Part shown: positions 1,371 to 56,132 of the stretch, piece after piece
Position numbering within the stretch: the stretch's first letter is position 1
Layout of the letters: every line of letters starts with the position of its first letter
Virus record (IMG/VR): IMGVR_UViG_3300027710_000011
Location: 62,001-126,000 of that record
Direction: 5' to 3' (one strand)
Length of the DNA: 64,000 bases
The notes under the pieces: generated by a model
What the model was told of the DNA's origin: nothing
The model's input: only the letters and a program-made list of their open reading frames with translations
Databases searched by the model: none
Made by a program: the position numbers and the translations under genes

Positions 1371-2024
1371 TTACGTGTAGAAGATGTGTCCACCAAGCCG
1401 ATAGCGAGCTGCGTAGCGCTTCAGAAATGGCTTTTCATGGACACCGTGGAAGTAGACGCTGCGGCCGACTGGATTGGGCTCGAGCTTGAGTAGGACCCGA
1501 CGTGCGATATCTCGAACATCGTCGAATTCCTTGGAAGGTTTGATAACGTCACTCCTCCCGTCGCAGTACCAGCCGAATTGGCATTGGTTCTTTACTGCTT
1601 TCCCGTTGATATGTTTTCCCTGGCGAACAACACCGCACACGGTGTCAGGGAATCGCTTGTCAGCTGCGCGATTGGTTACCACGTAACCTACAGCAGCCAG
1701 GCCTTTGCGGCCTTCACCCCTTGCTTCGAAATACATCGCTTGCGTTAGGCAGTTGAGACTATTCTCATCAGGCTGTTGCACTGACGGAACTTCGTCTTCC
1801 ACGATGAATGTCGCCGGCCCAAGTATTCGTGGATGGGGCTTGATTTCTTCAGAAACCTGTTTTGTGACAACCGGAGCTTGTTCAGCCAACACGGATTGCA
1901 CTTGACGAGTTTCTATCTCCGCTTGATGCGAAGAGATTGTCGAACAACCGACAAGGATAGCTAACATGAAGAACGTCAGCATAAGGCCTTTGACGGAGCC
2001 GAAGAGTTGATGTAGTTGGTTCAT
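1371..2024 (-). CDS. Cell wall hydrolase, SleB/Hydrolase_2 family, with N-terminal signal and possible lipobox
   Basis: CLTQAMYFEARGE, VVTNR, FPDTVCGVV, CQFGW and GGHIFY motifs; hydrophobic N-terminus ending LVGC. Confidence 0.9.
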   Translation of the reverse strand: MNQLHQLFGSVKGLMLTFFMLAILVGCSTISSHQAEIETRQVQSVLAEQAPVVTKQVSEEIKPHPRILGPATFIVEDEVPSVQQPDENSLNCLTQAMYFEARGEGRKGLAAVGYVVTNRAADKRFPDTVCGVVRQGKHINGKAVKNQCQFGWYCDGRSDVIKPSKEFDDVRDIARRVLLKLEPNPVGRSVYFHGVHEKPFLKRYAARYRLGGHIFYT

Positions 2025-47831: not shown

Positions 47832-48269
47832 TTAACCACGACCTCGTTTATTAGGTGAGCGGTAATCTTGGCATTCAAAATTACCACTCACGATGTCTTC
47901 AAAGAACGGGCCGAGCGTGAGTTCGATAAACATCATCTCATCACCGTTGGGATGGTGAAGCTTGAATTTATCACGAAGCTTTCCATAGGCATGTTCGTCA
48001 TTACCGGCAAGTAAGGCATGAAAGGCATCTAGTGCTTTCTCATGCGAAACACCTTCGGCAATAACGACATTCTCGATGCACAAATCAACACATGCGGCAT
48101 GCACACGGATCTTGGATCGACGCGTGTTGTCCATAGTTGATTGCTTCGTTTTCATAAAGTCAATCAACTTATCTGGACCAACGCGCTTGTGCTTGTAGAG
48201 CTTCAAGCGCACGTATAGCGGAAAGACTTTTTTGATGCTAGGTAATTCTGACATCTCACTTCCCTTCAA
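47832..48269 (-). CDS. Hypothetical protein
   Basis: ORF in array. Confidence 0.65.
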   Translation of the reverse strand: MKGSEMSELPSIKKVFPLYVRLKLYKHKRVGPDKLIDFMKTKQSTMDNTRRSKIRVHAACVDLCIENVVIAEGVSHEKALDAFHALLAGNDEHAYGKLRDKFKLHHPNGDEMMFIELTLGPFFEDIVSGNFECQDYRSPNKRGRG

Positions 48270-48552
48270 TCACTGGATGTTTGTAACGATTATCCAGCTT
48301 CTGTACGGCCGCAATGACTTCAGCGTTCGTGTAGTTGTTTGGATGATTCGCTATTTCAATTGCTTTGTCATACGCAGGGTCGTTATCGATGTTTGCGTAT
48401 TTACAAAGCAACTGTCGTTCACACAACCGGGTTTCCACGACTTGTTGGAACTTTTCCAAACCAAAAGCCATCACGCCGAAGCCGATTACGAAAACAAGAA
48501 TTACGCCTACAACTGAGCACGCGATTTTCAGACGCTTTATGAATTGCTTCAT
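48256..48552 (-). CDS. Single-pass membrane protein
   Basis: N-terminal TM IACSVVGVILVFVIGFGVMAFG. Confidence 0.7.
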   Translation of the reverse strand: MKQFIKRLKIACSVVGVILVFVIGFGVMAFGLEKFQQVVETRLCERQLLCKYANIDNDPAYDKAIEIANHPNNYTNAEVIAAVQKLDNRYKHPVIEGK

Positions 48553-48561
48553 TGTTGTCCC

Positions 48562-48927
48562 TTATGTTTTTTGTATTTTGGTTGGCAGCACTTCACACAC
48601 AAGCTTTCGAAATAACTCTTCTTGTTCAGCAAGAATCCGTGCATCGAAGTTTTCCTTCAAACCGATCACCAAAACACCAAATTCATCCACGTAAAAGTCA
48701 AGCCCTTCCTTCACAATCTGTTCATGGATCAGAGTGAAGTTAAGCATGCTTTTACTTGCCCAAAAACGCACGGTACCAGCAAGTACTTTGCCTTCTTCCT
48801 TCATGGCTTTGACTGCGTCAGGCCATGAATTTTGTTTAGCAGCAAAAGCCCAACTTGCACACGGATGAATGATGGGTGGTGTTGGCAAAATGAAGTCTTC
48901 GTGAAAGCGATTAGTGCCGTTAAACAT
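48562..48927 (-). CDS. Hypothetical protein
   Basis: ORF in array. Confidence 0.65.
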   Translation of the reverse strand: MFNGTNRFHEDFILPTPPIIHPCASWAFAAKQNSWPDAVKAMKEEGKVLAGTVRFWASKSMLNFTLIHEQIVKEGLDFYVDEFGVLVIGLKENFDARILAEQEELFRKLVCEVLPTKIQKT

Positions 48928-49178
48928 TATCGCTTCCTTTCTTCATGCGGTTGCTCATGTTCTTGTCCTTCATCAGTTCGGTATAGAGTTTCAAAGAGAA
49001 ACCCAACACGATCAAATTACCGACGACAAGCAAGACGTTGACGATGGTAAGTCCGATGTTTAGAGTGGTTATTTCCACATCGCCTCCTACAGTTAGTTTA
49101 CTTATACACCAGGTCAGTGATATGTAATCAAAAAAGAATAGACTGCATAAAGAGAGGAGCATTGGCTCCTCTCTTTAT

Positions 49179-49490
49179 TTAGAATTTAATTTGCTTCCAC
49201 TTAAAGAATTTTGCCTTCCAACCAGAATCTGTAAGAATATAACAGACGTCCGGTACTTTATTGGTGAATGTTTGAATCTTACGAACTTTCACGTCGATAG
49301 ATTCAAACAGTTTAATACAGCCATTCATATCACAGCAATTGTGCGATGGCATGTACAGCATACCTTCCTGTTCAAGAAAGTTATATTCGATACTTTCAAC
49401 CTGACACATAAGACCAGGGTGATTAAAGCCCCGAAGAGCTTCAGTTTTTTCTTCATTTTCATCAGGGATCCAGTCGTCTTCATTATTCAT
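49179..49490 (-). CDS. Hypothetical phage protein
   Basis: AT-rich ORF; LYM...NCCDMNGCI.LF motif. Confidence 0.65.
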   Translation of the reverse strand: MNNEDDWIPDENEEKTEALRGFNHPGLMCQVESIEYNFLEQEGMLYMPSHNCCDMNGCIKLFESIDVKVRKIQTFTNKVPDVCYILTDSGWKAKFFKWKQIKF

Positions 49491-49549
49491 GATATTTCCA
49501 ATGTTGATAAAACGTTACGGCATAGGGGGAGGCTAAAAGCCTCCCCCTT

Positions 49550-49999
49550 TTATTTCAAGTACTTTGGATCCAACATGGTCCCACGGCACTTAGGACTTTC
49601 ACACAAACACTTGAACTTACTCAGCTCAGTATCTGTGGTGCGCATTCTGTAATCAATGCAAAGCTCTTCACCTTGCTCGATTTTTCTCTTTGCATAAAAA
49701 CGAATCTGCAGACGATCATTCTCGTCTCGCTCTTCTCGCGCAGCTACATTAGGACTGCACGAGTGATTCATCTTGCGCATCGAGTTGAGCCGGTTGTCGC
49801 CATCGATAGTGGAACCATCAGACAGCTGAAAGCAATAGAACCTAACCCCATCATCTTTGATGAGATGCTCTGTGCCTTCTTTGTACCTCTTTCCAAAGTA
49901 CTGACCAACCAAGACATGACGAGCGATTGGGACGGTTGTGTACAAACCATCAAACCCGTGTTTTGTCTGGCGTACTTCCACTCCCTTAATTGCTCTCAT
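49550..49999 (-). CDS. SET-domain lysine methyltransferase with post-SET Zn site
   Basis: HGFDGLY, RKMNHSCSPN, GEELCIDY, CLCESPKCRG. Confidence 0.9.
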   Translation of the reverse strand: MRAIKGVEVRQTKHGFDGLYTTVPIARHVLVGQYFGKRYKEGTEHLIKDDGVRFYCFQLSDGSTIDGDNRLNSMRKMNHSCSPNVAAREERDENDRLQIRFYAKRKIEQGEELCIDYRMRTTDTELSKFKCLCESPKCRGTMLDPKYLK

Positions 50000-50030
50000 G
50001 ATTCTTATTGGTTTTGAAACTACAAAAGAA

Positions 50031-50130
50031 TGCTGTCTGAAGCTGCTTCACCTGTCAGGCCCAAGAGCGTAAGTGTACGCGTGCCAGAGAAGACGTTGCC
50101 GCCCCCGTTAATGCATATCTTCAGACAGCA
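50031..50130 (-). ncRNA. Putative ~100-nt structured RNA directly 3' of tRNA-Thr
   Basis: Perfect 12-bp terminal helix; internal GGGGGCG-GCAA-CGUCUUC and GCGUA-cacu-UACGC hairpins. Confidence 0.5.
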
Positions 50131-50132
50131 AC

Positions 50133-50207
50133 TGGTGCCGGATATCTGGATCGAACAGATGACCTACCGCTTACAAGGCGGTTGCTCTACCACTGAGCTA
50201 AGCCGGC
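50133..50207 (-). tRNA. tRNA-Thr(UGU)
   Basis: Full cloverleaf GCCGGCTTAGCTCAGTGGTAGAGC...CTTGTAA...TTCGATC...GGCACCA with encoded CCA. Confidence 0.95.
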
Positions 50208-50208
50208 T

Positions 50209-50493
50209 TTATTTTAACACCAAACAATCTTGTCGCATGCGAAACAAAGCACTGTCTTCCCAACACTCTTCGTTGGGGTAGTACAACTTCTCAGCGGCCG
50301 CGGCTTCGGTCGGGAAATTCTCGCCGATCGGGCAAAGCACAATGAACTGGCCAGGCTTTGCGAATTTCGCTGCGTCAGCCTCATCCCAATGCAAAGACTC
50401 GGCCATCCAATTCTTCTCGTCCACCACCGTGCCAACAGCCCAAATTCGCTTCGGCAAAGGCGCGCCTAACTGGTCTTGAGGTGTTTGTTCCAT
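50209..50493 (-). CDS. Hypothetical protein
   Basis: 94-aa ORF ending 1 nt before the tRNA. Confidence 0.6.
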   Translation of the reverse strand: MEQTPQDQLGAPLPKRIWAVGTVVDEKNWMAESLHWDEADAAKFAKPGQFIVLCPIGENFPTEAAAAEKLYYPNEECWEDSALFRMRQDCLVLK

Positions 50494-50638
50494 GATGTTC
50501 CTAAGACTTTAACGTGCTCGCCAACAACGCGGATACGGATACCAAGGTATCTGAACAGGTTTTGATTCAGGTTTCGATTCTTCCTTCGTCTTAGGACGAT
50601 AGGGAGGAATCGCGTACTTGACAACAGGCGCTACCACG

Positions 50639-50917
50639 TTAGCACCAAACAATCTTACCGCCTTGTACCCAGTAATGGGACTTGCACGGGAGTTGCTGGT
50701 TTCCGATGGATGGATGCAAGGTAGGTCCCTCAGGACTTTCCATGTACGTCCAACCACGTTCTTTATCGATGGGAGTCACCGTTTCAATACCGCACCCACA
50801 GGCACAGCGATGAATGGCGAGTTCGTACTTCTTGGAAACGTAGAGCTTACCGTCCTGCATCTTCGTGCGTTCCGGCATTGTCACTACTTCTTCAACTGTC
50901 AGCTTTTCAATTGTCAT
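50639..50917 (-). CDS. DUF6527-family metal-binding protein
   Basis: HRCACGCG, PTLHPSIG, CKSHYWV. Confidence 0.75.
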   Translation of the reverse strand: MTIEKLTVEEVVTMPERTKMQDGKLYVSKKYELAIHRCACGCGIETVTPIDKERGWTYMESPEGPTLHPSIGNQQLPCKSHYWVQGGKIVWC

Positions 50918-50925
50918 TGAAACCT

Positions 50926-51067
50926 CCATTCACCAGGACCCGAACAATACTCGTGTGCCCTTAGTCTGACTTATCATGCTGTCAAGCGCAGTGTATTTCA
51001 CCTGCCAGGTTATCCTCACCCGTCTATGAACCTTATCTAGAAAGATTCGCCAGGCCCTGGTGAATGG
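50926..51067 (-). ncRNA. Putative ~140-nt multibranch RNA or cis-regulatory leader
   Basis: 15-bp closing helix with one G-U on minus enclosing four hairpins; 3' arm abuts the GGAGG RBS. Confidence 0.5.
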
Positions 51068-51279
51068 AACTTCATCTCTATATGGCTGCACCTCTAGGTC
51101 GCATCATGGTCTCTGGAGACAGCACTGTGTGCCGAAACGACAACCAAGCGTTACTTCCACAATTAACAAGCATCACCAAATTAACTGGGTTTCTATTCTT
51201 TCGACCTTGCGGGATCGATGGTCCCGCTACCAGATGCACCCATATAAAGACGGTGATTTAAGTTAACCGTCTTCCGCTC

Positions 51280-51507
51280 TTATCTTCCGATGGTTTTAAG
51301 ACGCAGTATCAGAGCTGCTTGTGCGTCCATGCTGGATTCAAGTTCAGAAATAGCGAGTTCCAAATCACTCGGTGGATGTGGCGAGTGAAGTGTTTTCTGA
51401 GCAAGTTCAGAGATTTGTCTCAGCTTAACTATGTTGGCAGAGACAACAGTGTGCTGATCTTGAAGCACCTGTATCTTCTCTTTGAGATCAGGATCGTTAC
51501 TATCCAT
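51280..51507 (-). CDS. Small coiled-coil protein
   Basis: 75-aa ORF with RBS. Confidence 0.6.
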   Translation of the reverse strand: MDSNDPDLKEKIQVLQDQHTVVSANIVKLRQISELAQKTLHSPHPPSDLELAISELESSMDAQAALILRLKTIGR

Positions 51508-51535
51508 TATCTATCTCCAATCAAAAAGAATAGAC

Positions 51536-52258
51536 TCAGTAGTTTCCACCACTTAAGAATTTGGAGATTGTCCAATGAGAAACGCCTAGACGTCTGCCTA
51601 TTTCGCGCAAGCTTAGCTCAGTCATGTTCTCGTAGATGTAAGCCTGCATCTCCGGAGTTAACACGCTTTGACTATTTTCTTCACCTATCCTTTTTGGAAT
51701 AAGTCCGCTGCTCGATGCGTGTTGCATATTCTCAAGACCAGTTGACCATTCAAGATTCCTAATAGATGGGTTTTCTTTATTGCCATCCACATGATTGACT
51801 TGTGGTTTATCTTCCGGGTTAGGTATGAAAGCCTTTGCTACACATAAATGTAGTTTCATCGCGTAATTTTTACCCTGACGCCCACCTATTTTTGTTACAT
51901 GCCCAGGATAGCCGTTAAGGGAATTTTCTTTAACGACTTTCATACTACGTTTAGATATCAGATGGCCTTCGCTGCTTATCATGAAATATTCAGACGTAGG
52001 ACCAGGAACATCTTTAACCTGTATTTCTAACCTAGGATGTGGGATGCCGCTTTTCAAAACCACAGGTCCAGCAGGCGTCATGAGGCCAGTTTCACCAGGC
52101 TGTAAGGATCTACCAATGCTTGTTTCAACTTGATATTGGCGAAACGATTTTAATACCTTTGTAACGTCACCATTTTCAAATGTTGTTGTAATTAATGCAT
52201 AGCTGAATCCGTCGTCATTAACTTCTTCAACAACTACAGATTTGACATTGTGTTCCAT
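51536..52258 (-). CDS. HNH homing endonuclease (NUMOD4-HNH-HTH)
   Basis: YFMISSEG, HLCVAKAFIPNPE..PQVNHVDGNKENP...NLEW, C-terminal LREIGRRLGVS; AT-rich. Confidence 0.9.
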   Translation of the reverse strand: MEHNVKSVVVEEVNDDGFSYALITTTFENGDVTKVLKSFRQYQVETSIGRSLQPGETGLMTPAGPVVLKSGIPHPRLEIQVKDVPGPTSEYFMISSEGHLISKRSMKVVKENSLNGYPGHVTKIGGRQGKNYAMKLHLCVAKAFIPNPEDKPQVNHVDGNKENPSIRNLEWSTGLENMQHASSSGLIPKRIGEENSQSVLTPEMQAYIYENMTELSLREIGRRLGVSHWTISKFLSGGNY

Positions 52259-52315
52259 AACACCTCCAAAAATAACGGCATAAAGAGAGGTTTTACCCTC
52301 TCTTTATGCACTCAA

Positions 52316-52393
52316 GGCTCCGCATTAGAGAATCGAACTCTACTAACCAGTGATTAACAGTCACGCCCATGCACCTTGCTCGGGTTTTGCGGA
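52316..52393 (-). tRNA. tRNA-Asn(GUU), atypical
   Basis: Anticodon loop CTGTTAA, T arm TAGAG-TTCGATT-CTCTA, acceptor TCCGCA/TGCGGA, G73; ends CC without A. Confidence 0.75.
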
Positions 52394-52411
52394 ATCGTTC
52401 TTTACCCAATA

Positions 52412-52436
52412 GCTCTACCAACTGAGCTATCAGGGA
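52412..52436 (-). pseudogene. tRNA 5' fragment (acceptor strand plus D arm only)
   Basis: TCCCTGA-TA-GCTC-AGTTGGTA-GAGC, followed by no anticodon or T arm. Confidence 0.65.
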
Positions 52437-52447
52437 ATTGTTCTGTG

Positions 52448-52554
52448 TGGCGCTACTTGGAATCGAACCAAGCACCTGCCTTTCTGTCGTAGCTAACGCA
52501 GCAGCGTAATCGCAGGGACAGATCGGTTGCTCTAGCCATCTGAGCTATAGCGCC
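52448..52554 (-). ncRNA. tRNA-like RNA with expanded anticodon domain
   Basis: Perfect acceptor, D and T arms; 33 extra nt in the anticodon region. Confidence 0.75.
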
Positions 52555-52566
52555 TAAACTGGGGAC

Positions 52567-52640
52567 ATAATGGAGCAAGAACCTGTGGAGTCAACGACTT
52601 TTCAGCTATTGACTTGATCCACGGGTCCTCGCTACATTAT
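52567..52640 (-). ncRNA. 74-nt long irregular hairpin RNA
   Basis: Continuous pairing with G-U on minus, 4-nt bulge, GAAA tetraloop. Confidence 0.5.
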
Positions 52641-52661
52641 TAGTGCTTAGCTAGTAAATTT

Positions 52662-53090
52662 CTACTGACCACCACTTTGTTTTCCATCACCATAAACCTC
52701 TTCGAACAGCACGATGATGTACGCTGCGCCCTTAACGCCTATTTGAAATATTGCCCAGCCCAAGAAAAACAACGGGATGAGCATGTTCAGAACAGGAATG
52801 AATCCCCACGTCATGACGACCTTACGAGCTAGTAAGATTTGCGGCGTCACGCTGGTGTGAGGATACGTCCGGATGTGAATATACATCATAATCATGACCA
52901 TCGCAAGGACGGCCACGTAGACCAGGTAAGCTCCTTCGAGCAAAACACTTGGTCCCAGACGCGTATAGATGACCACGCAGAGATTGACGAAGCTTCGTCC
53001 AACCACGAACGTCCACCAAGTAGCTATTGCCATCAAGCCATAGACCAGTAGCGCCTTCCAGAACTTGTTAAACGCTTCTTTTGGTTTCAT
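52662..53090 (-). CDS. Membrane protein (3 TM)
   Basis: Hydrophobic segments; IPVLNMLIP motif. Confidence 0.75.
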   Translation of the reverse strand: MKPKEAFNKFWKALLVYGLMAIATWWTFVVGRSFVNLCVVIYTRLGPSVLLEGAYLVYVAVLAMVMIMMYIHIRTYPHTSVTPQILLARKVVMTWGFIPVLNMLIPLFFLGWAIFQIGVKGAAYIIVLFEEVYGDGKQSGGQ

Positions 53091-53102
53091 ACAGATCCTT
53101 TC

Positions 53103-53723
53103 TTAGAATTTGTCAAGCTTGGCGATTGCGTACGTCCATTTCTTGTCCCGCAAATCTTCATCACCATGGCACGCCATTGCCTTGTAAGTGGTGAACATAT
53201 GGGAAGCAATGCCTTCCATATCGCGATTAGGCCATTGCGAAGGAATCATCATCGCTGTTTTCATGGTCTCGTCGCCGCAATTAATGACAAGAACATGAGT
53301 GACAACGTCAGAGATGGGATCGAGCTTGAGTTTATTGCGGATCACGCTAGCGTGCTCGAAACTGTAGCTGTACCAGTCTTCTTTCAGCGCATTGAGATAG
53401 CGTTCGGACAACGTCTTCACCGTGAGATCATGATTCATCCAGTGGGCATCGGATTGAATCATGAGCCGTAAGTGCTCGATCTGACGTGTCTTGTTCCAGT
53501 AGCGACGTTTTTCCCAATGCTTAAAGCGCTCACCCAATCCACCGTTGGTCCAAGCGTAGTTGATTTCAAACCACGTGCTGTCCACACCAAAGTAGATCAG
53601 AGCCAGTGCCAGCATTCCTGCTACCGGGTTCTTATCGGTTACCGCAAAGTACACACAGATTGCAGCCACCGCCAGCATGATGATGCCTGCAATCCCGATA
53701 CCAGAGAAGATTCTTTTCTTCAC
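53103..53723 (-). CDS. Membrane-anchored hypothetical protein
   Basis: Two N-terminal TMs then a soluble domain. Confidence 0.7.
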   Translation of the reverse strand: MKKRIFSGIGIAGIIMLAVAAICVYFAVTDKNPVAGMLALALIYFGVDSTWFEINYAWTNGGLGERFKHWEKRRYWNKTRQIEHLRLMIQSDAHWMNHDLTVKTLSERYLNALKEDWYSYSFEHASVIRNKLKLDPISDVVTHVLVINCGDETMKTAMMIPSQWPNRDMEGIASHMFTTYKAMACHGDEDLRDKKWTYAIAKLDKF

Positions 53724-53725
53724 GA

Positions 53726-54535
53726 TCAGTCCTTCATGTCGACGATGTCAAAAGTAATGATGTTCAGGCTACCAGGCTGAGGCTGGAGCTTGCCGTCAAC
53801 GCTTTCCAATTGCAGCATTGCTCGCATGCGGAACTCAGGTTTCTTACCTGCTTTTATCTGACCAACCAAGGCGCCGCCAAAAGCGCCGGTCGGTACGACT
53901 TTCCCGCGAACCACACCTTCGTTGTCAATCCACACCTGACTGATCTCGTGACTAACGTATTGCTCGTCAATCCGAGTGAGGCGGTTGGTGATGACGTTTT
54001 CCAGCGCCGAGGCTTTATCCTCGGGTTTGCCGAACTCGCCTTTCAGCGCTCCGGCGTTAATTCGAGGCTGGACGGAGAACAAGGCCTTTGCAACTTCTAT
54101 GCGAGGATAGTAGCGATTGGAATTTTCGTACCAGTAGTCTGCACGGTGCAGTTCCACATTGTTCAAATGCTGAGCGAGAAATGTCGCGTCCTTAATCTCG
54201 CGTTTGAGCTCGCCATCCACAAGCCGAAGTTCTTCGTACGTGTACACACCCGAATCTCGCGGATCAGGCGATCTGTAAATACGAACCATCGGCTCACTGT
54301 TATCCGCCACGATGTCGTCAAGAACGATGCGTGACAGAGCCGTATCGCCTTCTCCCGTGACAACTGCTTTAGGAAACTCATCAAACACCCGTTTGAGAGC
54401 CTTAGAAACCGTATCGTAACCGACGAACAACGGATGGACGTTTCCGTTGATCAACACACGGACAGTGTTTGCTTCGGTAACGTACAGGCTCAAACGGACG
54501 TCAAGGTAGCCGTCGCTATTTGCTTCGATCTTCAT
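53726..54535 (-). CDS. Prohead-protease (gp175/gp21-type) homologue, catalytic residues substituted
   Basis: GALKGEFGKP, RLTRIDE..VSHEI, G.V.PTG.FG..L, FRMRA, ITFD. Confidence 0.55.
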   Translation of the reverse strand: MKIEANSDGYLDVRLSLYVTEANTVRVLINGNVHPLFVGYDTVSKALKRVFDEFPKAVVTGEGDTALSRIVLDDIVADNSEPMVRIYRSPDPRDSGVYTYEELRLVDGELKREIKDATFLAQHLNNVELHRADYWYENSNRYYPRIEVAKALFSVQPRINAGALKGEFGKPEDKASALENVITNRLTRIDEQYVSHEISQVWIDNEGVVRGKVVPTGAFGGALVGQIKAGKKPEFRMRAMLQLESVDGKLQPQPGSLNIITFDIVDMKD

Positions 54536-54613
54536 TATGTTTCTCCTGTTTATACAAAAAAGAAAAGGAGGCCGAAGCCTCCTCTTATTCCGTCAGTTCT
54601 TTCATTGCTCGCC

Positions 54614-54976
54614 TCAGGTTGCCAAAAGCGAAGGAAGGTTTAGCTCGATGGGACGACGCATCGCTGCGCGAGCAGATGCCCACAGCAGACAAACGATGAC
54701 CACATCATCGCTTTGGAACTGCTCTTTGGCTGCGATAAGAATGTCCATCACCGCGACAGCGGCTTCGTAGTTCTTACCTAGACCTCGAGCGTATTCTCGT
54801 GTTTTCACCATCTGGTCCGGAGGTGCCTGCAAAGCAGACATCAGCAGGAACACTACTTCGCTCTTCATGGCAATCGACGACATGTACAGCTGCTTGTTAG
54901 CGCTGCTCACCGACATTTCTTTTCCATTGACGGTAAAGATACGACGGTCGTCGTCTGTGAAACGTTCTTCTGCCAC
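54614..54976 (-). CDS. Hypothetical protein
   Basis: ORF 3 nt after the TAXI stop. Confidence 0.7.
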   Translation of the reverse strand: MAEERFTDDDRRIFTVNGKEMSVSSANKQLYMSSIAMKSEVVFLLMSALQAPPDQMVKTREYARGLGKNYEAAVAVMDILIAAKEQFQSDDVVIVCLLWASARAAMRRPIELNLPSLLAT

Positions 54977-54979
54977 GAC

Positions 54980-55948
54980 TTACTTCTTCTTGGGAGTGGG
55001 CGAAGCGGCTTGAGCATTGGGCAGCTCGTACCAAAAGCGCGGATCACCACGGTCTTCGGAGTTCACATCTTGCCAGGCAGGATGTGTGCCATCAGCGTCT
55101 TGGATCTTGGGCAACTGCTTGTAGAAGCAAGCGCGCAGAGCAGCCAGCTTTGCCAGTTGCTCAGGATCACGGAAAACACGAGTGACAAACAAAGCACGCG
55201 ATGCCAGTGTGTCGACAGCACGACCACCGTTCAGGTTTGCGTATTCCACCTTGACAGCAGAGTACACGCCTTGGGTGTCGGAGTTGCCGCGCAGAGGGAT
55301 CAGTTTGAAGTTGCCCTTGACGGCCTTGACAGCGTCGGATTGCAAACCAGCAGAGATCAACACGCCGTCAACCTTACCGGCAGTCAGAGCCGCCAGAAGG
55401 AGACTGGTGCTTTCATAGCTGTCATCGATCTTCCACTGATACTTCATCATGTCGCTCAGAATGCGAGCGGTCACAGCAGAACCACCCACAGCGCCGATGG
55501 TGCGGTTCTTGAAGTCTTCAGCGTTGTTGTAAGCAACATCAGCGCCACCCAGCTTGGTAAAGCCCAGGTTGACGCCGCCTTCCTTCTTCACGTCAGCACG
55601 TGCGATCAGGTGAGCCGCTTCGTTGTGCAGCGTGAACAGCGTCTTCAGGTTCGACACCGAACTGGCGTTGTCGAAACGCGCAGCAGCCATCACGTCAAAC
55701 GGGATCAGCGCGGCCTTCACGCTATTGCCCTTGATCGACGCCAGGTTGGCCGTGCCGCCCTTGGACTGGACTTCTTCGAGCTTCATATTGTCGTCGCTGC
55801 AACGCTCGCTCAAGGTGCCGAGCATGTTGGAGTACACGCTGCCATTCTTGGCACCGCCACCACCGCCGACCTTGAAGACTTCTTGCGCTTGGATAGACAC
55901 GGACAGCATGAGAGCTGCGACCATCAGAAACAGACGATTCGTTTTCAC
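54980..55948 (-). CDS. TAXI-family (TRAP) periplasmic solute-binding protein
   Basis: Signal peptide, G..GSVY, SKGGTANL, LHNEAAHLIAR, IGAVGGS, GKVDG. Confidence 0.8.
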   Translation of the reverse strand: MKTNRLFLMVAALMLSVSIQAQEVFKVGGGGGAKNGSVYSNMLGTLSERCSDDNMKLEEVQSKGGTANLASIKGNSVKAALIPFDVMAAARFDNASSVSNLKTLFTLHNEAAHLIARADVKKEGGVNLGFTKLGGADVAYNNAEDFKNRTIGAVGGSAVTARILSDMMKYQWKIDDSYESTSLLLAALTAGKVDGVLISAGLQSDAVKAVKGNFKLIPLRGNSDTQGVYSAVKVEYANLNGGRAVDTLASRALFVTRVFRDPEQLAKLAALRACFYKQLPKIQDADGTHPAWQDVNSEDRGDPRFWYELPNAQAASPTPKKK

Positions 55949-55988
55949 AGATGTTTTCCTTTATAAGGTTTGGTTGAGGTTGTACTTC

Positions 55989-56132
55989 TTACTTGCCCAT
56001 GCCGCTGTAGCCGCCGCTGGTTTGTTCAGCAGGCACAGCGGTCTCGGCATCCGCGCCGCTTGTGAGCAAATAGTTCATGCCGACGAGGAAAGCGACCAAG
56101 GCAAGGCCGCCGAGGATGTAGTACTTCTTCAT
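55989..56132 (-). CDS. Small membrane or secreted protein (47 aa)
   Basis: Read manually: MKKYYILGGLALVAFLVGMNYLL...; ATG overlaps the upstream TGA. Confidence 0.6.
   Translation of the reverse strand: MKKYYILGGLALVAFLVGMNYLLTSGADAETAVPAEQTSGGYSGMGK

What the first reader, a model, noticed from the sequence alone, without database searches (positions are those of the whole stretch)
52448..52554. tRNA-like RNA with perfect acceptor, D and T arms but a 33-nt-expanded anticodon arm
Seen (minus): GGCGCUA-UA-GCUC-AGAUGGCUA-GAGC-A-ACCGA-UCUGUC-[28 nt]-GACAGA-AAGGC-AGGUG-CUUGG-UUCGAUU-CCAAG-UAGCGCC-A. The anticodon region forms an elongated irregular stem (UCUGUC/GACAGA, then ACGC-UGCU-GCGU) with no 7-nt loop. 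Removing any 33 nt does not restore a paired anticodon stem, so it is not a simple intron. No CCA is encoded. Inference: the intact elbow and acceptor suggest selection as a tRNA mimic (decoy for anticodon nucleases or tRNA-sensing defences, or a synthetase/EF-Tu ligand) rather than decay.
Basis: partly seen in the sequence, partly recalled or inferred. Interest (0 to 1): 0.76.

Follow-up and report, generated by a model that had tools for sequence, protein, structure and literature searches.

The report
Phage tRNA gene with plugged anticodon
A jumbo-phage genome carries a gene that folds like a perfect tRNA, except that a 33-base hairpin replaces the anticodon loop, so it cannot read codons. 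It sits in a tRNA locus scarred by homing endonucleases, and nothing yet shows whether it is a useful tRNA mimic or a freshly broken tRNA gene.

Summary
Window 52448-52554 (minus strand) scores 40.7 bits on Rfam tRNA (cut-off 29). It has a 7/7 acceptor stem, a 4/4 D stem and a 5/5 T stem. In place of the anticodon stem-loop there is one stable 50-nt hairpin. No contiguous excision restores an anticodon stem (best 3 of 5 pairs), and no CCA is encoded.

It is the first gene of a small RNA unit: promoter-like site, this RNA, a pristine 5' relic of a resident tRNA-Asn, an imported tRNA-Asn(GUU), a terminator, then an HNH homing endonuclease.

The genome is a 277-kb metagenomic jumbo phage distantly related to Ralstonia phage phiRSL1. 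No orthologue was found, so covariation and expression could not be tested.

Unannotated, non-decodable expanded tRNA-likes also occur in phiRSL1, RP12/RP31 and two metagenomic kin. Their inserts are unrelated in sequence. IMG/VR holds many expanded phage tRNA genes, and some families show compensatory changes.

Best reading (0.42): a Val(GAC)/Asp(GUC)-type tRNA gene disabled by an anticodon-pairing insert during endonuclease-driven turnover. Its RNA would probably still mature like a "tRNA scaffold". A selected mimic or decoy (0.28) is not excluded.

The parts
52567..52594 (-). Sigma-70-like promoter candidate (TTGACT, 16-nt spacer, CATTAT). It ends 12 nt upstream of the tRNA-like RNA and would give a leader of about 6 nt.
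   Evidence: It is a consensus match only: 5 sites were found in the region against 3.3 expected. A pond-metagenome contig keeps 52545-52645 at about 96% identity.
52448..52554 (-). The tRNA-shaped RNA gene (107 nt). Acceptor 5' strand 52548-52554; D arm 52529-52545; expanded arm 52478-52527; variable loop 52473-52477; T arm 52456-52472; acceptor 3' strand 52449-52455; discriminator A at 52448.
52478..52527 (-). Expanded arm replacing the anticodon stem-loop: 2 Watson-Crick pairs, a tandem G.A/A.A, then 6 bp (UCUGUC/GACAGA) that pair the former anticodon-loop bases CU-GUC with the insert's 3' end. Beyond that lie a 3x3 internal loop and a distal hairpin with a UGCU loop.
   Evidence: There is no second copy in the genome and no similarity to any fetched locus.
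52405..52436 (-). Relic of a resident tRNA-Asn. It keeps the first ~27 nt (acceptor 5' strand plus an intact D arm), followed by UAUUGGG, which pairs back onto the acceptor strand to give an 11-bp hairpin.
   Evidence: Alignment A3 against the tRNA-Asn of L125, FLC4-3B and RP12; fold.
52316..52393 (-). tRNA-Asn(GUU) of an unusual type (D arm CCCG-AGCAAGGUGCA-UGGG; 3' end G-CC-U). It is probably functional and was imported as a cassette.
   Evidence: ARAGORN finds it only at relaxed threshold. It is 79-86% identical to Acinetobacter T4-like phages and cyanophage BUCT-ZZ01, with compensatory acceptor changes. Contigs from RNA libraries of other samples cover exactly 52316-52395 with 1-2 differences and different flanks.
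52278..52309 (-). Intrinsic-terminator-like hairpin (13 bp) followed by a T run. It closes the RNA unit.
51536..52258 (-). Free-standing HNH homing endonuclease (HNH_3 domain plus a C-terminal helix-turn-helix), immediately downstream of the RNA unit.
   Evidence: A different HNH gene sits at the same place after the tRNA-Asn in the related contig L125.

Best explanation
The element is a class-I tRNA gene that has lost its anticodon loop. By its discriminator A73 and the retained CU-GUC/GAC-AG bases, it is of Val(GAC) or Asp(GUC) type.

A 31-33-nt self-folding insert sits just 3' of the anticodon position. Its 3' end pairs with the former anticodon loop, and the 3' strand of the anticodon stem no longer matches the 5' strand. 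The RNA therefore cannot decode.

It heads a short transcription unit that also makes a working tRNA-Asn. If transcribed, its intact acceptor/T minihelix and elbow should let host RNase P, 3' trimming enzymes and CCA-adding enzyme mature it. The result would be a stable ~110-nt tRNA-shaped RNA, as happens with engineered 'tRNA scaffold' chimeras. This step is inferred, not shown.

The most likely origin is a recent rearrangement at a tRNA locus that homing endonucleases repeatedly cut and rebuild. On that view it is a young disabled allele with no demonstrated function of its own.
For: Shown:
- tRNA core with an expanded arm, non-restorable by excision.
- The same locus holds a clearly non-functional yet undecayed tRNA-Asn 5' relic, which also ends in an inverted repeat of its own upstream sequence.
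- It also holds an imported tRNA-Asn cassette shared at 97% identity or more with unrelated contigs and an HNH endonuclease.
- The related contig L125 has a tRNA 5' fragment, a tRNA-Asn and a different HNH gene at the homologous place.
- The region is hypervariable among kin.
- '5' tRNA fragment + whole tRNA' scars recur in IMG/VR.
- Relatives of RP12 have tRNA-Asp(GUC) directly upstream of tRNA-Asn.
- The element lacks CCA, while this genome's tRNA-Thr encodes it.
- No orthologue or second copy of the insert exists.
- phiRSL1 carries further decayed tRNA debris next to its expanded tRNA-like.

From the literature:
- A free-standing homing endonuclease, SegB, cuts within tRNA gene sequences and drives recombination there (PMC13096335).
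- tRNA chimeras whose anticodon stem-loop is replaced are processed and stable in bacteria (PMC3401473).
Against: - All 16 stem pairs outside the anticodon arm and all tertiary-contact bases are intact, while the defects cluster in the anticodon stem. Random drift would not produce that pattern. It needs either one recent complex event or selection.
- The insert is a well-defined hairpin that continues the anticodon stem coaxially (z -2.74). A random insertion would not be expected to do so.
- Non-decodable expanded tRNA-likes with intact cores recur in at least four related jumbo phages.
- Some IMG/VR families of such RNAs show compensatory changes.
- The age of the insertion is unknown.
Confidence: 0.42

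Rival explanations
1. It is a selected, non-decoding tRNA mimic. The tRNA top half provides RNase P/CCA maturation, stability and recognition by tRNA-binding factors. The long arm either presents a ligand-binding hairpin (a natural 'tRNA scaffold') or makes the RNA a decoy or inhibitor for host enzymes or defences that bind tRNA bodies or cut anticodon arms.
For: - The cloverleaf core is perfect, while the anticodon is buried in a 10-step helix.
- A promoter-like site lies directly upstream.
- Analogous unannotated elements with intact cores and non-restorable arms occur in several kin: phiRSL1 (124 nt, 41.3 bits), L126 (122 nt, 40.6 bits), RP12/RP31 (108 nt, encodes CCA) and G001 (101 nt).
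- IMG/VR families of expanded tRNA-likes have conserved inserts and compensatory acceptor or anticodon-stem changes. In L042 versus L108, for example, three acceptor pairs change on both sides.
- Anticodon-replaced tRNA chimeras are stable in bacteria.
- tRNA-targeting defences are common, including one reported to remove the anticodon arm (reference list).
Against: - There is no orthologue, no covariation and no expression evidence for this element.
- The inserts of the window, L126 and phiRSL1 are not alignable, so this is not one conserved family.
- A pristine dead relic lies next door.
- No CCA is encoded.
- No partner protein is evident. The phage has no Ro/TROVE, RtcB or CCA-adding enzyme, and its neighbouring ORFs have no known domains.
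Confidence: 0.28
2. The insert is selected at the DNA level. It interrupts the recognition or cleavage site of a homing endonuclease that targets the anticodon-stem-loop region of this tRNA gene. That may be the neighbouring HNH or a competitor's enzyme. The allele would then be immune to cutting, at the cost of a dispensable tRNA.
For: - An HNH homing endonuclease lies 190 bp downstream of the unit.
- Two different HNH genes occupy this spot in two kin.
- tRNA relics show repeated cutting and repair here.
- Free-standing endonucleases cut in tRNA genes and need self-immunity.
- The phage keeps only two working tRNAs, so tRNAs seem dispensable.
Against: - The target of this HNH is unknown, and its position next to tRNA-Asn points to that gene rather than to element 1.
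- Immunity usually needs only point changes.
- The hypothesis does not explain why the insert folds so neatly onto the anticodon loop.
Confidence: 0.12
3. It is a real intron-containing tRNA of the kind called 'enigmatic introns' in phage tRNAs. The insert would be removed by an unknown host or phage activity, leaving a tRNA-Val(GAC) or tRNA-Asp(GUC) that works despite a weak anticodon stem.
For:
- The architecture matches 'clean' IMG/VR cases: the insert sits right after the anticodon and its 3' end pairs with the anticodon loop. In L019, L065, L057, L091 and L081, excision restores a 5-bp stem and a CU-NNN-RA loop.
- Lak megaphages were reported to have conserved tRNA introns (PMC6784885).
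Against: - Excision leaves only 3/5 stem pairs with tandem G.A/A.A, plus either an extra base at position 26/27 or a 6-nt variable loop.
- There is no bulge-helix-bulge motif, because both splice points would lie inside a helix or a symmetric loop.
- The phage has no splicing endonuclease or RtcB.
- At 31-33 nt the insert is far too small for a group I intron, and there is no ribozyme hit.
Confidence: 0.1
4. It is part of a larger Y-RNA-like (YrlA) or tmRNA-like RNA that spans the T arm of element 1 and the following D-arm hairpin.
For: A weak Rfam YrlA match at 52411-52477 (18.9 bits, E 3.9) joins the T arm of element 1 to the D arm of the relic.
Against: - The score is far below the gathering cut-off (69).
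- The match is explained by two adjacent tRNA pieces.
- The phage has no Ro/TROVE gene.
- ARAGORN finds no tmRNA in the genome.
Confidence: 0.02

Closest known systems
Phage tRNA genes with 'enigmatic introns' (Lak megaphages, Devoto et al. 2019, PMC6784885), and the 'clean' expanded tRNA genes seen here in IMG/VR (e.g. L019, L065, L057, L091)
   Same: - A short insert (20-50 nt) sits in the anticodon loop of an otherwise perfect phage tRNA gene.
- The insert's 3' end pairs with the anticodon-loop bases.
- Default bacterial tRNA finders do not detect these genes.
   Different: - In those cases excision restores a canonical anticodon arm. Here it does not (3/5 pairs).
- Those introns are conserved between genomes. 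This insert is an orphan.
Engineered tRNA scaffold chimeras (Ponchon and Dardel; described in PMC3401473)
   Same: - The anticodon stem-loop is replaced by a structured RNA.
- The acceptor, D and T arms are kept. In bacteria this suffices for tRNA-like processing and high stability.
   Different: - Those chimeras are man-made.
- Here the cargo hairpin has no known ligand, and processing has not been shown.
tRNA pseudogenes and fragments left by homing-endonuclease activity in phage tRNA clusters (T4/T6 SegB, PMC13096335)
   Same: - A free-standing endonuclease lies beside the tRNA genes.
- There are partial tRNA copies, imported cassettes, and recombination at short homologies.
   Different: - Typical scars are truncations, like the Asn relic at 52405-52436.
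- This element keeps both halves of the tRNA and gains a structured insert.
Unannotated expanded tRNA-likes of Ralstonia jumbo phages phiRSL1 (AB366653.2 188801-188924) and RP12/RP31 (AP017924.1 132080-132187), and of metagenomic kin L126 and G001
   Same: - They share the phage group and the overall design: an intact acceptor/D/T core, 100-124 nt long, a long irregular arm and no usable anticodon loop.
- The RP12 element also lies directly upstream of a tRNA-Asn.
   Different: - They have different parental tRNAs. phiRSL1's resembles a tRNA-Arg(CCG) body, as in L144.
- Their inserts are unrelated and their genomic positions differ.
- The RP12 element encodes CCA and has a long variable arm.
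tmRNA tRNA-like domain and bacterial Y RNA (YrlA) tRNA-like module
   Same: These are non-decoding RNAs that keep the tRNA acceptor/T-arm and elbow geometry while a long helix replaces the anticodon stem.
   Different: - There is no tag reading frame and no permuted order of modules.
- The phage has no Ro or SmpB partner.
- Rfam scores are far below the cut-offs.

Membership tests
Canonical tRNA (Rfam RF00005) | 7-bp acceptor stem, D arm and T arm with a UUCRANY loop, plus the conserved tertiary bases | tested here: met
   40.7 bits against a gathering score of 29, and all three arms pair perfectly.
Canonical tRNA (Rfam RF00005) | 5-bp anticodon stem with a 7-nt loop (U33, purine 37) | tested here: not met
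   a 50-nt hairpin takes its place, and the best stem after any excision has 3/5 pairs.
Canonical tRNA (Rfam RF00005) | 3' CCA (encoded or added) and aminoacylation | not testable with these tools
   CCA is not encoded; the 3' end reads A-CAC. The phage has no CCA-adding enzyme. Addition by a host enzyme is unknown.
Archaeal/eukaryal-type (bulge-helix-bulge) tRNA intron | Two 3-nt bulges on opposite strands, separated by a 4-bp helix, at the exon-intron junctions | tested here: not met
   the only 3-nt unpaired stretches (CCU and UAC) face each other in a symmetric internal loop.
Archaeal/eukaryal-type (bulge-helix-bulge) tRNA intron | Splicing endonuclease (PF01974) and RtcB-type ligase available | tested here: not met
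   neither is present in the 277-kb phage genome. The host is unknown.
Group I intron in a tRNA anticodon loop | Ribozyme core of about 200 nt or more (P1-P9) | tested here: not met
   The insert is 31-33 nt. The permissive Rfam scan of 48000-56000 gives no intron or ribozyme hit.
Phage tRNA 'enigmatic intron' class | Insert next to the anticodon that pairs with the anticodon loop | tested here: met
   UCUGUC/GACAGA pairing is seen. The same design occurs in L019 and L065.
Phage tRNA 'enigmatic intron' class | Excision yields a canonical anticodon arm | tested here: not met
   the window element gives 3/5 pairs, whereas 13 IMG/VR cases give 5/5 pairs with a canonical loop.
Phage tRNA 'enigmatic intron' class | The same insert is conserved in related genomes | tested here: not met
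   Searches find no other copy. Four assemblies of the same phage are identical.
Y RNA-like (YrlA, RF02553) | Rfam score above gathering, a Ro-binding stem and a Ro (TROVE) partner | tested here: not met
   The match scores 18.9 bits against a cut-off of 69. The genome has no TROVE gene.
tmRNA | tRNA-like domain plus a tag-encoding reading frame | tested here: not met
   ARAGORN in tmRNA mode finds none in the genome, and Rfam finds none in the window. Kin L126, L261 and L262 do carry permuted tmRNA elsewhere.
Homing-endonuclease scar / tRNA pseudogene | Loss of decoding capacity in a tRNA locus that holds an endonuclease gene and other tRNA fragments | tested here: met
Homing-endonuclease scar / tRNA pseudogene | Signs of neutral decay (mismatches spread over the stems) | tested here: not met
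   There are no mismatches in the 16 pairs outside the anticodon arm. The adjacent undoubted relic is equally undecayed, so this test has little power here.

The most novel reading that the evidence does not exclude
The RNA is a phage-made, non-decoding tRNA mimic, in effect a natural 'tRNA scaffold'. The tRNA top half recruits host maturation enzymes and gives stability. The long arm, with the anticodon sealed in a helix, acts as bait or inhibitor for a host tRNA-binding enzyme or a tRNA-cleaving defence. Jumbo phages of the phiRSL1 and RP12 groups would each have made their own version from different tRNAs.
Probability: 0.25. Interest if true: 0.75.

Novelty: new variant of a known kind. Interest (0 to 1): 0.45.

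Why it matters
If the RNA is functional, it would be a natural counterpart of the laboratory tRNA scaffold and a candidate phage counter-measure against tRNA-directed defences. It could be tested with a 330-bp construct.

If it is a relic, it is still useful in two ways.
- It shows that tRNA loci next to homing endonucleases produce pristine-looking, non-functional tRNA shapes. 'Intact arms' alone therefore must not be read as selection.
- It exposes an annotation gap. Expanded tRNA-like genes are unannotated in the reference genomes of phiRSL1 and RP12/RP31, and they are numerous in viral metagenomes, where several families do show compensatory evolution.

Tried and rejected
Orthologue searches, all negative:
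- Exact and degenerate DNA patterns in IMG/VR.
- JGI metagenomes gave only the phage's own genome and an ordinary tRNA-Met(CAU).
- GTDB genomes.
- BLAST against phage records.

Kin found through neighbouring proteins:
- The TRAP-like ORF gave many kin, but their contigs end before the locus or lack it.
- The 142-aa upstream ORF has no homologue.
- Look-ups of that ORF and of the HNH protein returned only four identical assemblies of the same phage.

Other tests:
- Expression: public contigs, RNA libraries included, cover only the tRNA-Asn cassette.
- Mobile palindromic element: rejected, because the genome has no second copy.
- Homology between the inserts of the window, L126 and phiRSL1: rejected.
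- Y RNA, tmRNA, ribozyme, BHB intron and group I intron: rejected.
- A special link between odd tRNA-likes and tRNA-Asn: considered, because it is seen in the window, RP12, KARL-1 and BUCT-ZZ01. It is judged to be probably an effect of tRNA arrays, since other contigs have ordinary tRNAs upstream of the same Asn cassette.

Full report
**What is there**

Rfam's tRNA model matches end to end at 40.7 bits against a gathering score of 29. The E-value is 3.7e-5 for the window. 46 nt stand where the model expects 13.

ARAGORN misses the gene with default settings. With introns allowed it calls 'tRNA-Val(gac), 31-nt intron', but the anticodon stem it draws is C-G, C-G, G.A, A.A, U-A.

I scanned every excision point, two stem registers and variable loops of 4-6 nt. 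The best result was 3 of 5 stem pairs.

The arm alone folds into one hairpin. Its energy is -18.8 kcal/mol, it takes 0.89 of the ensemble, z is -2.74, and 1 of 200 shuffles folds as well.

The 3' end is A-CAC. The genome's ordinary tRNA-Thr(UGU) at 50133-50207 encodes CCA.

**Context in the window**

The element opens a compact minus-strand RNA unit, which contains in order:
- a promoter-like site at 52594-52567 (a weak consensus match);
- the tRNA-like RNA;
- a hairpin at 52436-52405;
- a tRNA-Asn(GUU) at 52393-52316;
- a strong terminator-like hairpin at 52309-52278;
- a 240-aa HNH endonuclease gene at 52258-51536, with an HNH_3 domain and a C-terminal helix-turn-helix.

The hairpin is the first ~27 nt of a 'resident-type' tRNA-Asn. 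It aligns with the tRNA-Asn of the related contig L125 and of Ralstonia phages FLC4-3B and RP12, then breaks off. The broken end is followed by UAUUGGG, which pairs back on the acceptor strand.

The complete tRNA-Asn belongs to a different type with an odd D arm.
- It is shared at 79-86% identity with Acinetobacter T4-like phages, where it is unannotated, and with cyanophage BUCT-ZZ01. The acceptor stems show compensatory changes.
- Contigs from RNA libraries of other samples cover exactly 52316-52395 with 1-2 differences and unrelated flanks.
- It therefore behaves as a widely shared cassette.

**The genome and its kin**

The window lies in a 276,772-bp IMG/VR virus record judged complete.
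- Its TRAP-like ORF (54980-55948) is 49% identical to that of Ralstonia jumbo phage phiRSL1 and 36-38% identical to RP12/RP31/FLC.
- Closer kin at 63-84% identity exist only as metagenomic contigs.
- The stretch between that ORF and the BubE-like ORF is variable among kin.
- In L125 (75% identical) the homologous place holds a tRNA 5' fragment, an ordinary tRNA-Asn and a different HNH gene.

The locus is therefore a homing-endonuclease hot spot that accumulates tRNA fragments. Similar '5' fragment + whole tRNA' scars appear in IMG/VR. Published work on T6 SegB shows that a free-standing endonuclease cuts within tRNA gene sequences and drives recombination there.

**Search for orthologues and expression**

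None of the following found another copy of the element or its insert:
- DNA patterns in IMG/VR;
- JGI metagenomes;
- GTDB genomes;
- BLAST against phage records.

Four assemblies of the same phage from different samples are identical over 6.4 kb. The insert has no second copy in the genome.

Public read-derived contigs give no information on the element itself. A pond-metagenome relative keeps the promoter region and the first 10 nt of the element at about 96% identity, but its contigs stop there.

**Analogues**

Whole-record tRNA scans of kin revealed unannotated expanded tRNA-likes with intact cores:
- phiRSL1 188801-188924: 124 nt, 41.3 bits;
- contig L126 20249-20370: 122 nt, 40.6 bits;
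- RP12/RP31 132080-132187: 108 nt, CCA encoded, directly upstream of tRNA-Asn;
- G001 90244-90344: 101 nt.

The L126 and phiRSL1 elements, like the window's, cannot be made decodable by excision. The RP12 and G001 elements have no evident usable anticodon loop by inspection.

Their parental tRNAs differ. The phiRSL1 element has the acceptor, anticodon-stem ends and T arm of a tRNA-Arg(CCG)-like gene (L144). The inserts are not alignable: z is 1.5, -0.7 and -0.3 for the three pairs. phiRSL1 also carries more degraded tRNA debris nearby.

A pattern scan of IMG/VR returned at least 120 loci, 94 of them distinct, with 20-50 extra nt between the D and T arms.
- 62 have 7/7 acceptor stems.
- 13 are 'clean' introns placed right after the anticodon, with the insert pairing to the anticodon loop.
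- Several families keep the same insert in different tRNA bodies, with compensatory stem changes.

Phage tRNA 'enigmatic introns' were first reported in Lak megaphages.

**Interpretation**

The retained CU-GUC at loop positions 32-36, the complementary GAC-AG on the other side, and discriminator A73 point to a Val(GAC)- or Asp(GUC)-type parent. tRNA-Asp(GUC) lies directly upstream of tRNA-Asn in relatives of RP12.

The design matches the clean phage introns: the insert sits after the anticodon and its 3' end pairs with the loop. The difference is that the 3' strand of the anticodon stem does not match, so the product cannot decode.

The defects are confined to the anticodon arm, while 16 other pairs are perfect. 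That excludes long neutral drift. It leaves two possibilities: one recent complex event, or selection.

The neighbouring Asn relic is certainly dead, yet it is equally undecayed and also ends in an inverted repeat of upstream sequence. This shows that the first possibility happens at this very locus.

I therefore rank the readings as follows:
- 0.42: a young, disabled allele produced during endonuclease-driven turnover;
- 0.28: a selected mimic or scaffold;
- 0.12: an allele selected at the DNA level for immunity to endonuclease cutting;
- 0.10: a spliced intron-containing tRNA.

Whichever is true, the intact acceptor/T minihelix and elbow make tRNA-like maturation and stability of the transcript likely. 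I infer this from the behaviour of engineered anticodon-replaced tRNA chimeras.

The phage itself encodes no splicing endonuclease, RtcB, CCA-adding enzyme or Ro protein.

**Verdict**

This is a real and clean structural oddity that was correctly described. It belongs to a broader, poorly annotated class of expanded phage tRNA genes. This copy is an orphan in a scarred locus, and selection for a mimic function is not shown. Interest is moderate. The decisive data are orthologous loci from related strains and end-mapped small-RNA data.

Noticed in passing
window 52316-52393 (-): A tRNA-Asn(GUU) with an unusual D arm (CCCG-AGCAAGGUGCA-UGGG), an A7.A66 mismatch and the 3' end G-CC-U. Default ARAGORN and Rfam gathering both miss it. 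Near-identical copies (1-2 differences) lie in contigs of RNA libraries from other samples with different flanks. Homologues in the Acinetobacter T4-like phages inspected or listed here (KARL-1 and about 13 others in the hit table) are unannotated.
   Followed up: partly
window 52405-52436 (-): An undecayed 5' relic of a different, resident-type tRNA-Asn. It is extended into an 11-bp hairpin by an inverted copy of its own acceptor strand. This may be a footprint of fold-back repair after an endonuclease cut.
   Followed up: partly
window 51536-52258 (-); L125 15749-15982: Two different HNH endonuclease genes occupy the same position, just downstream of tRNA-Asn, in two related phages. The locus is a homing hot spot.
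   Followed up: partly
L134 3302-3425 (-) = AB366653.2 188801-188924; L251 = AP017924.1 132080-132187 (-); L126 20249-20370; G001:C1:90244-90344: Expanded tRNA-like genes of 101-124 nt with intact acceptor/D/T arms, in phiRSL1, RP12/RP31 and two metagenomic kin; those in the deposited phiRSL1 and RP12 records are unannotated. phiRSL1 also has several more degraded tRNA-like pieces just upstream (L134 3830-4150, minus strand).
   Followed up: partly
IMG/VR loci L004-L123 (e.g. L042/L108/L109/L118; L020/L070; L045/L071; L016/L076; L014/L063/L110; L018/L094/L114/L054/L096): Families of viral tRNA-like genes carry the same 25-50-nt insert in different tRNA bodies, with compensatory changes in the acceptor and anticodon stems. 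One class has a ~45-nt insert with a conserved ACAGCAA motif between the D arm and a normal anticodon arm (Asn, Thr, Lys). Another has a second T-arm-like hairpin plus a GAAA hairpin in place of the anticodon loop. Another shares GUAGGGAGUCAUGACCUGAG.
   Followed up: partly
L126 1010-1316; L261 6263-6593; L262 6432-6737: Permuted (two-piece) tmRNA genes occur in three related phage contigs, 4-9 kb upstream of the TRAP-like marker. None is found in the window's own genome.
   Followed up: no
L001 about 1583-1662 (-) and L002 about 1590-1660 (-): In Acinetobacter phage KARL-1 and cyanophage BUCT-ZZ01, the gene directly upstream of the odd-type tRNA-Asn is another aberrant tRNA-like. It has an acceptor stem, a T arm and one long arm. 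The KARL-1 copy has a UCU anticodon-like loop, no D arm and an encoded CCA.
   Followed up: no
L263 5732-6568: A related 224-kb phage contig encodes a Thg1-like protein (tRNA-His guanylyltransferase family), which suggests tRNA-end chemistry in this phage group. I did not search the window's own genome for it.
   Followed up: no
window 53726-54535 (-), 54980-55948 (-), 49550-49999 (-), 50639-50929 (-): Neighbouring genes are a Peptidase_S80/prohead-protease-like ORF, a TRAP/NMT1_3-like periplasmic-binding-fold ORF conserved across the phiRSL1 group, a SET-domain ORF and a BubE-like ORF.
   Followed up: no
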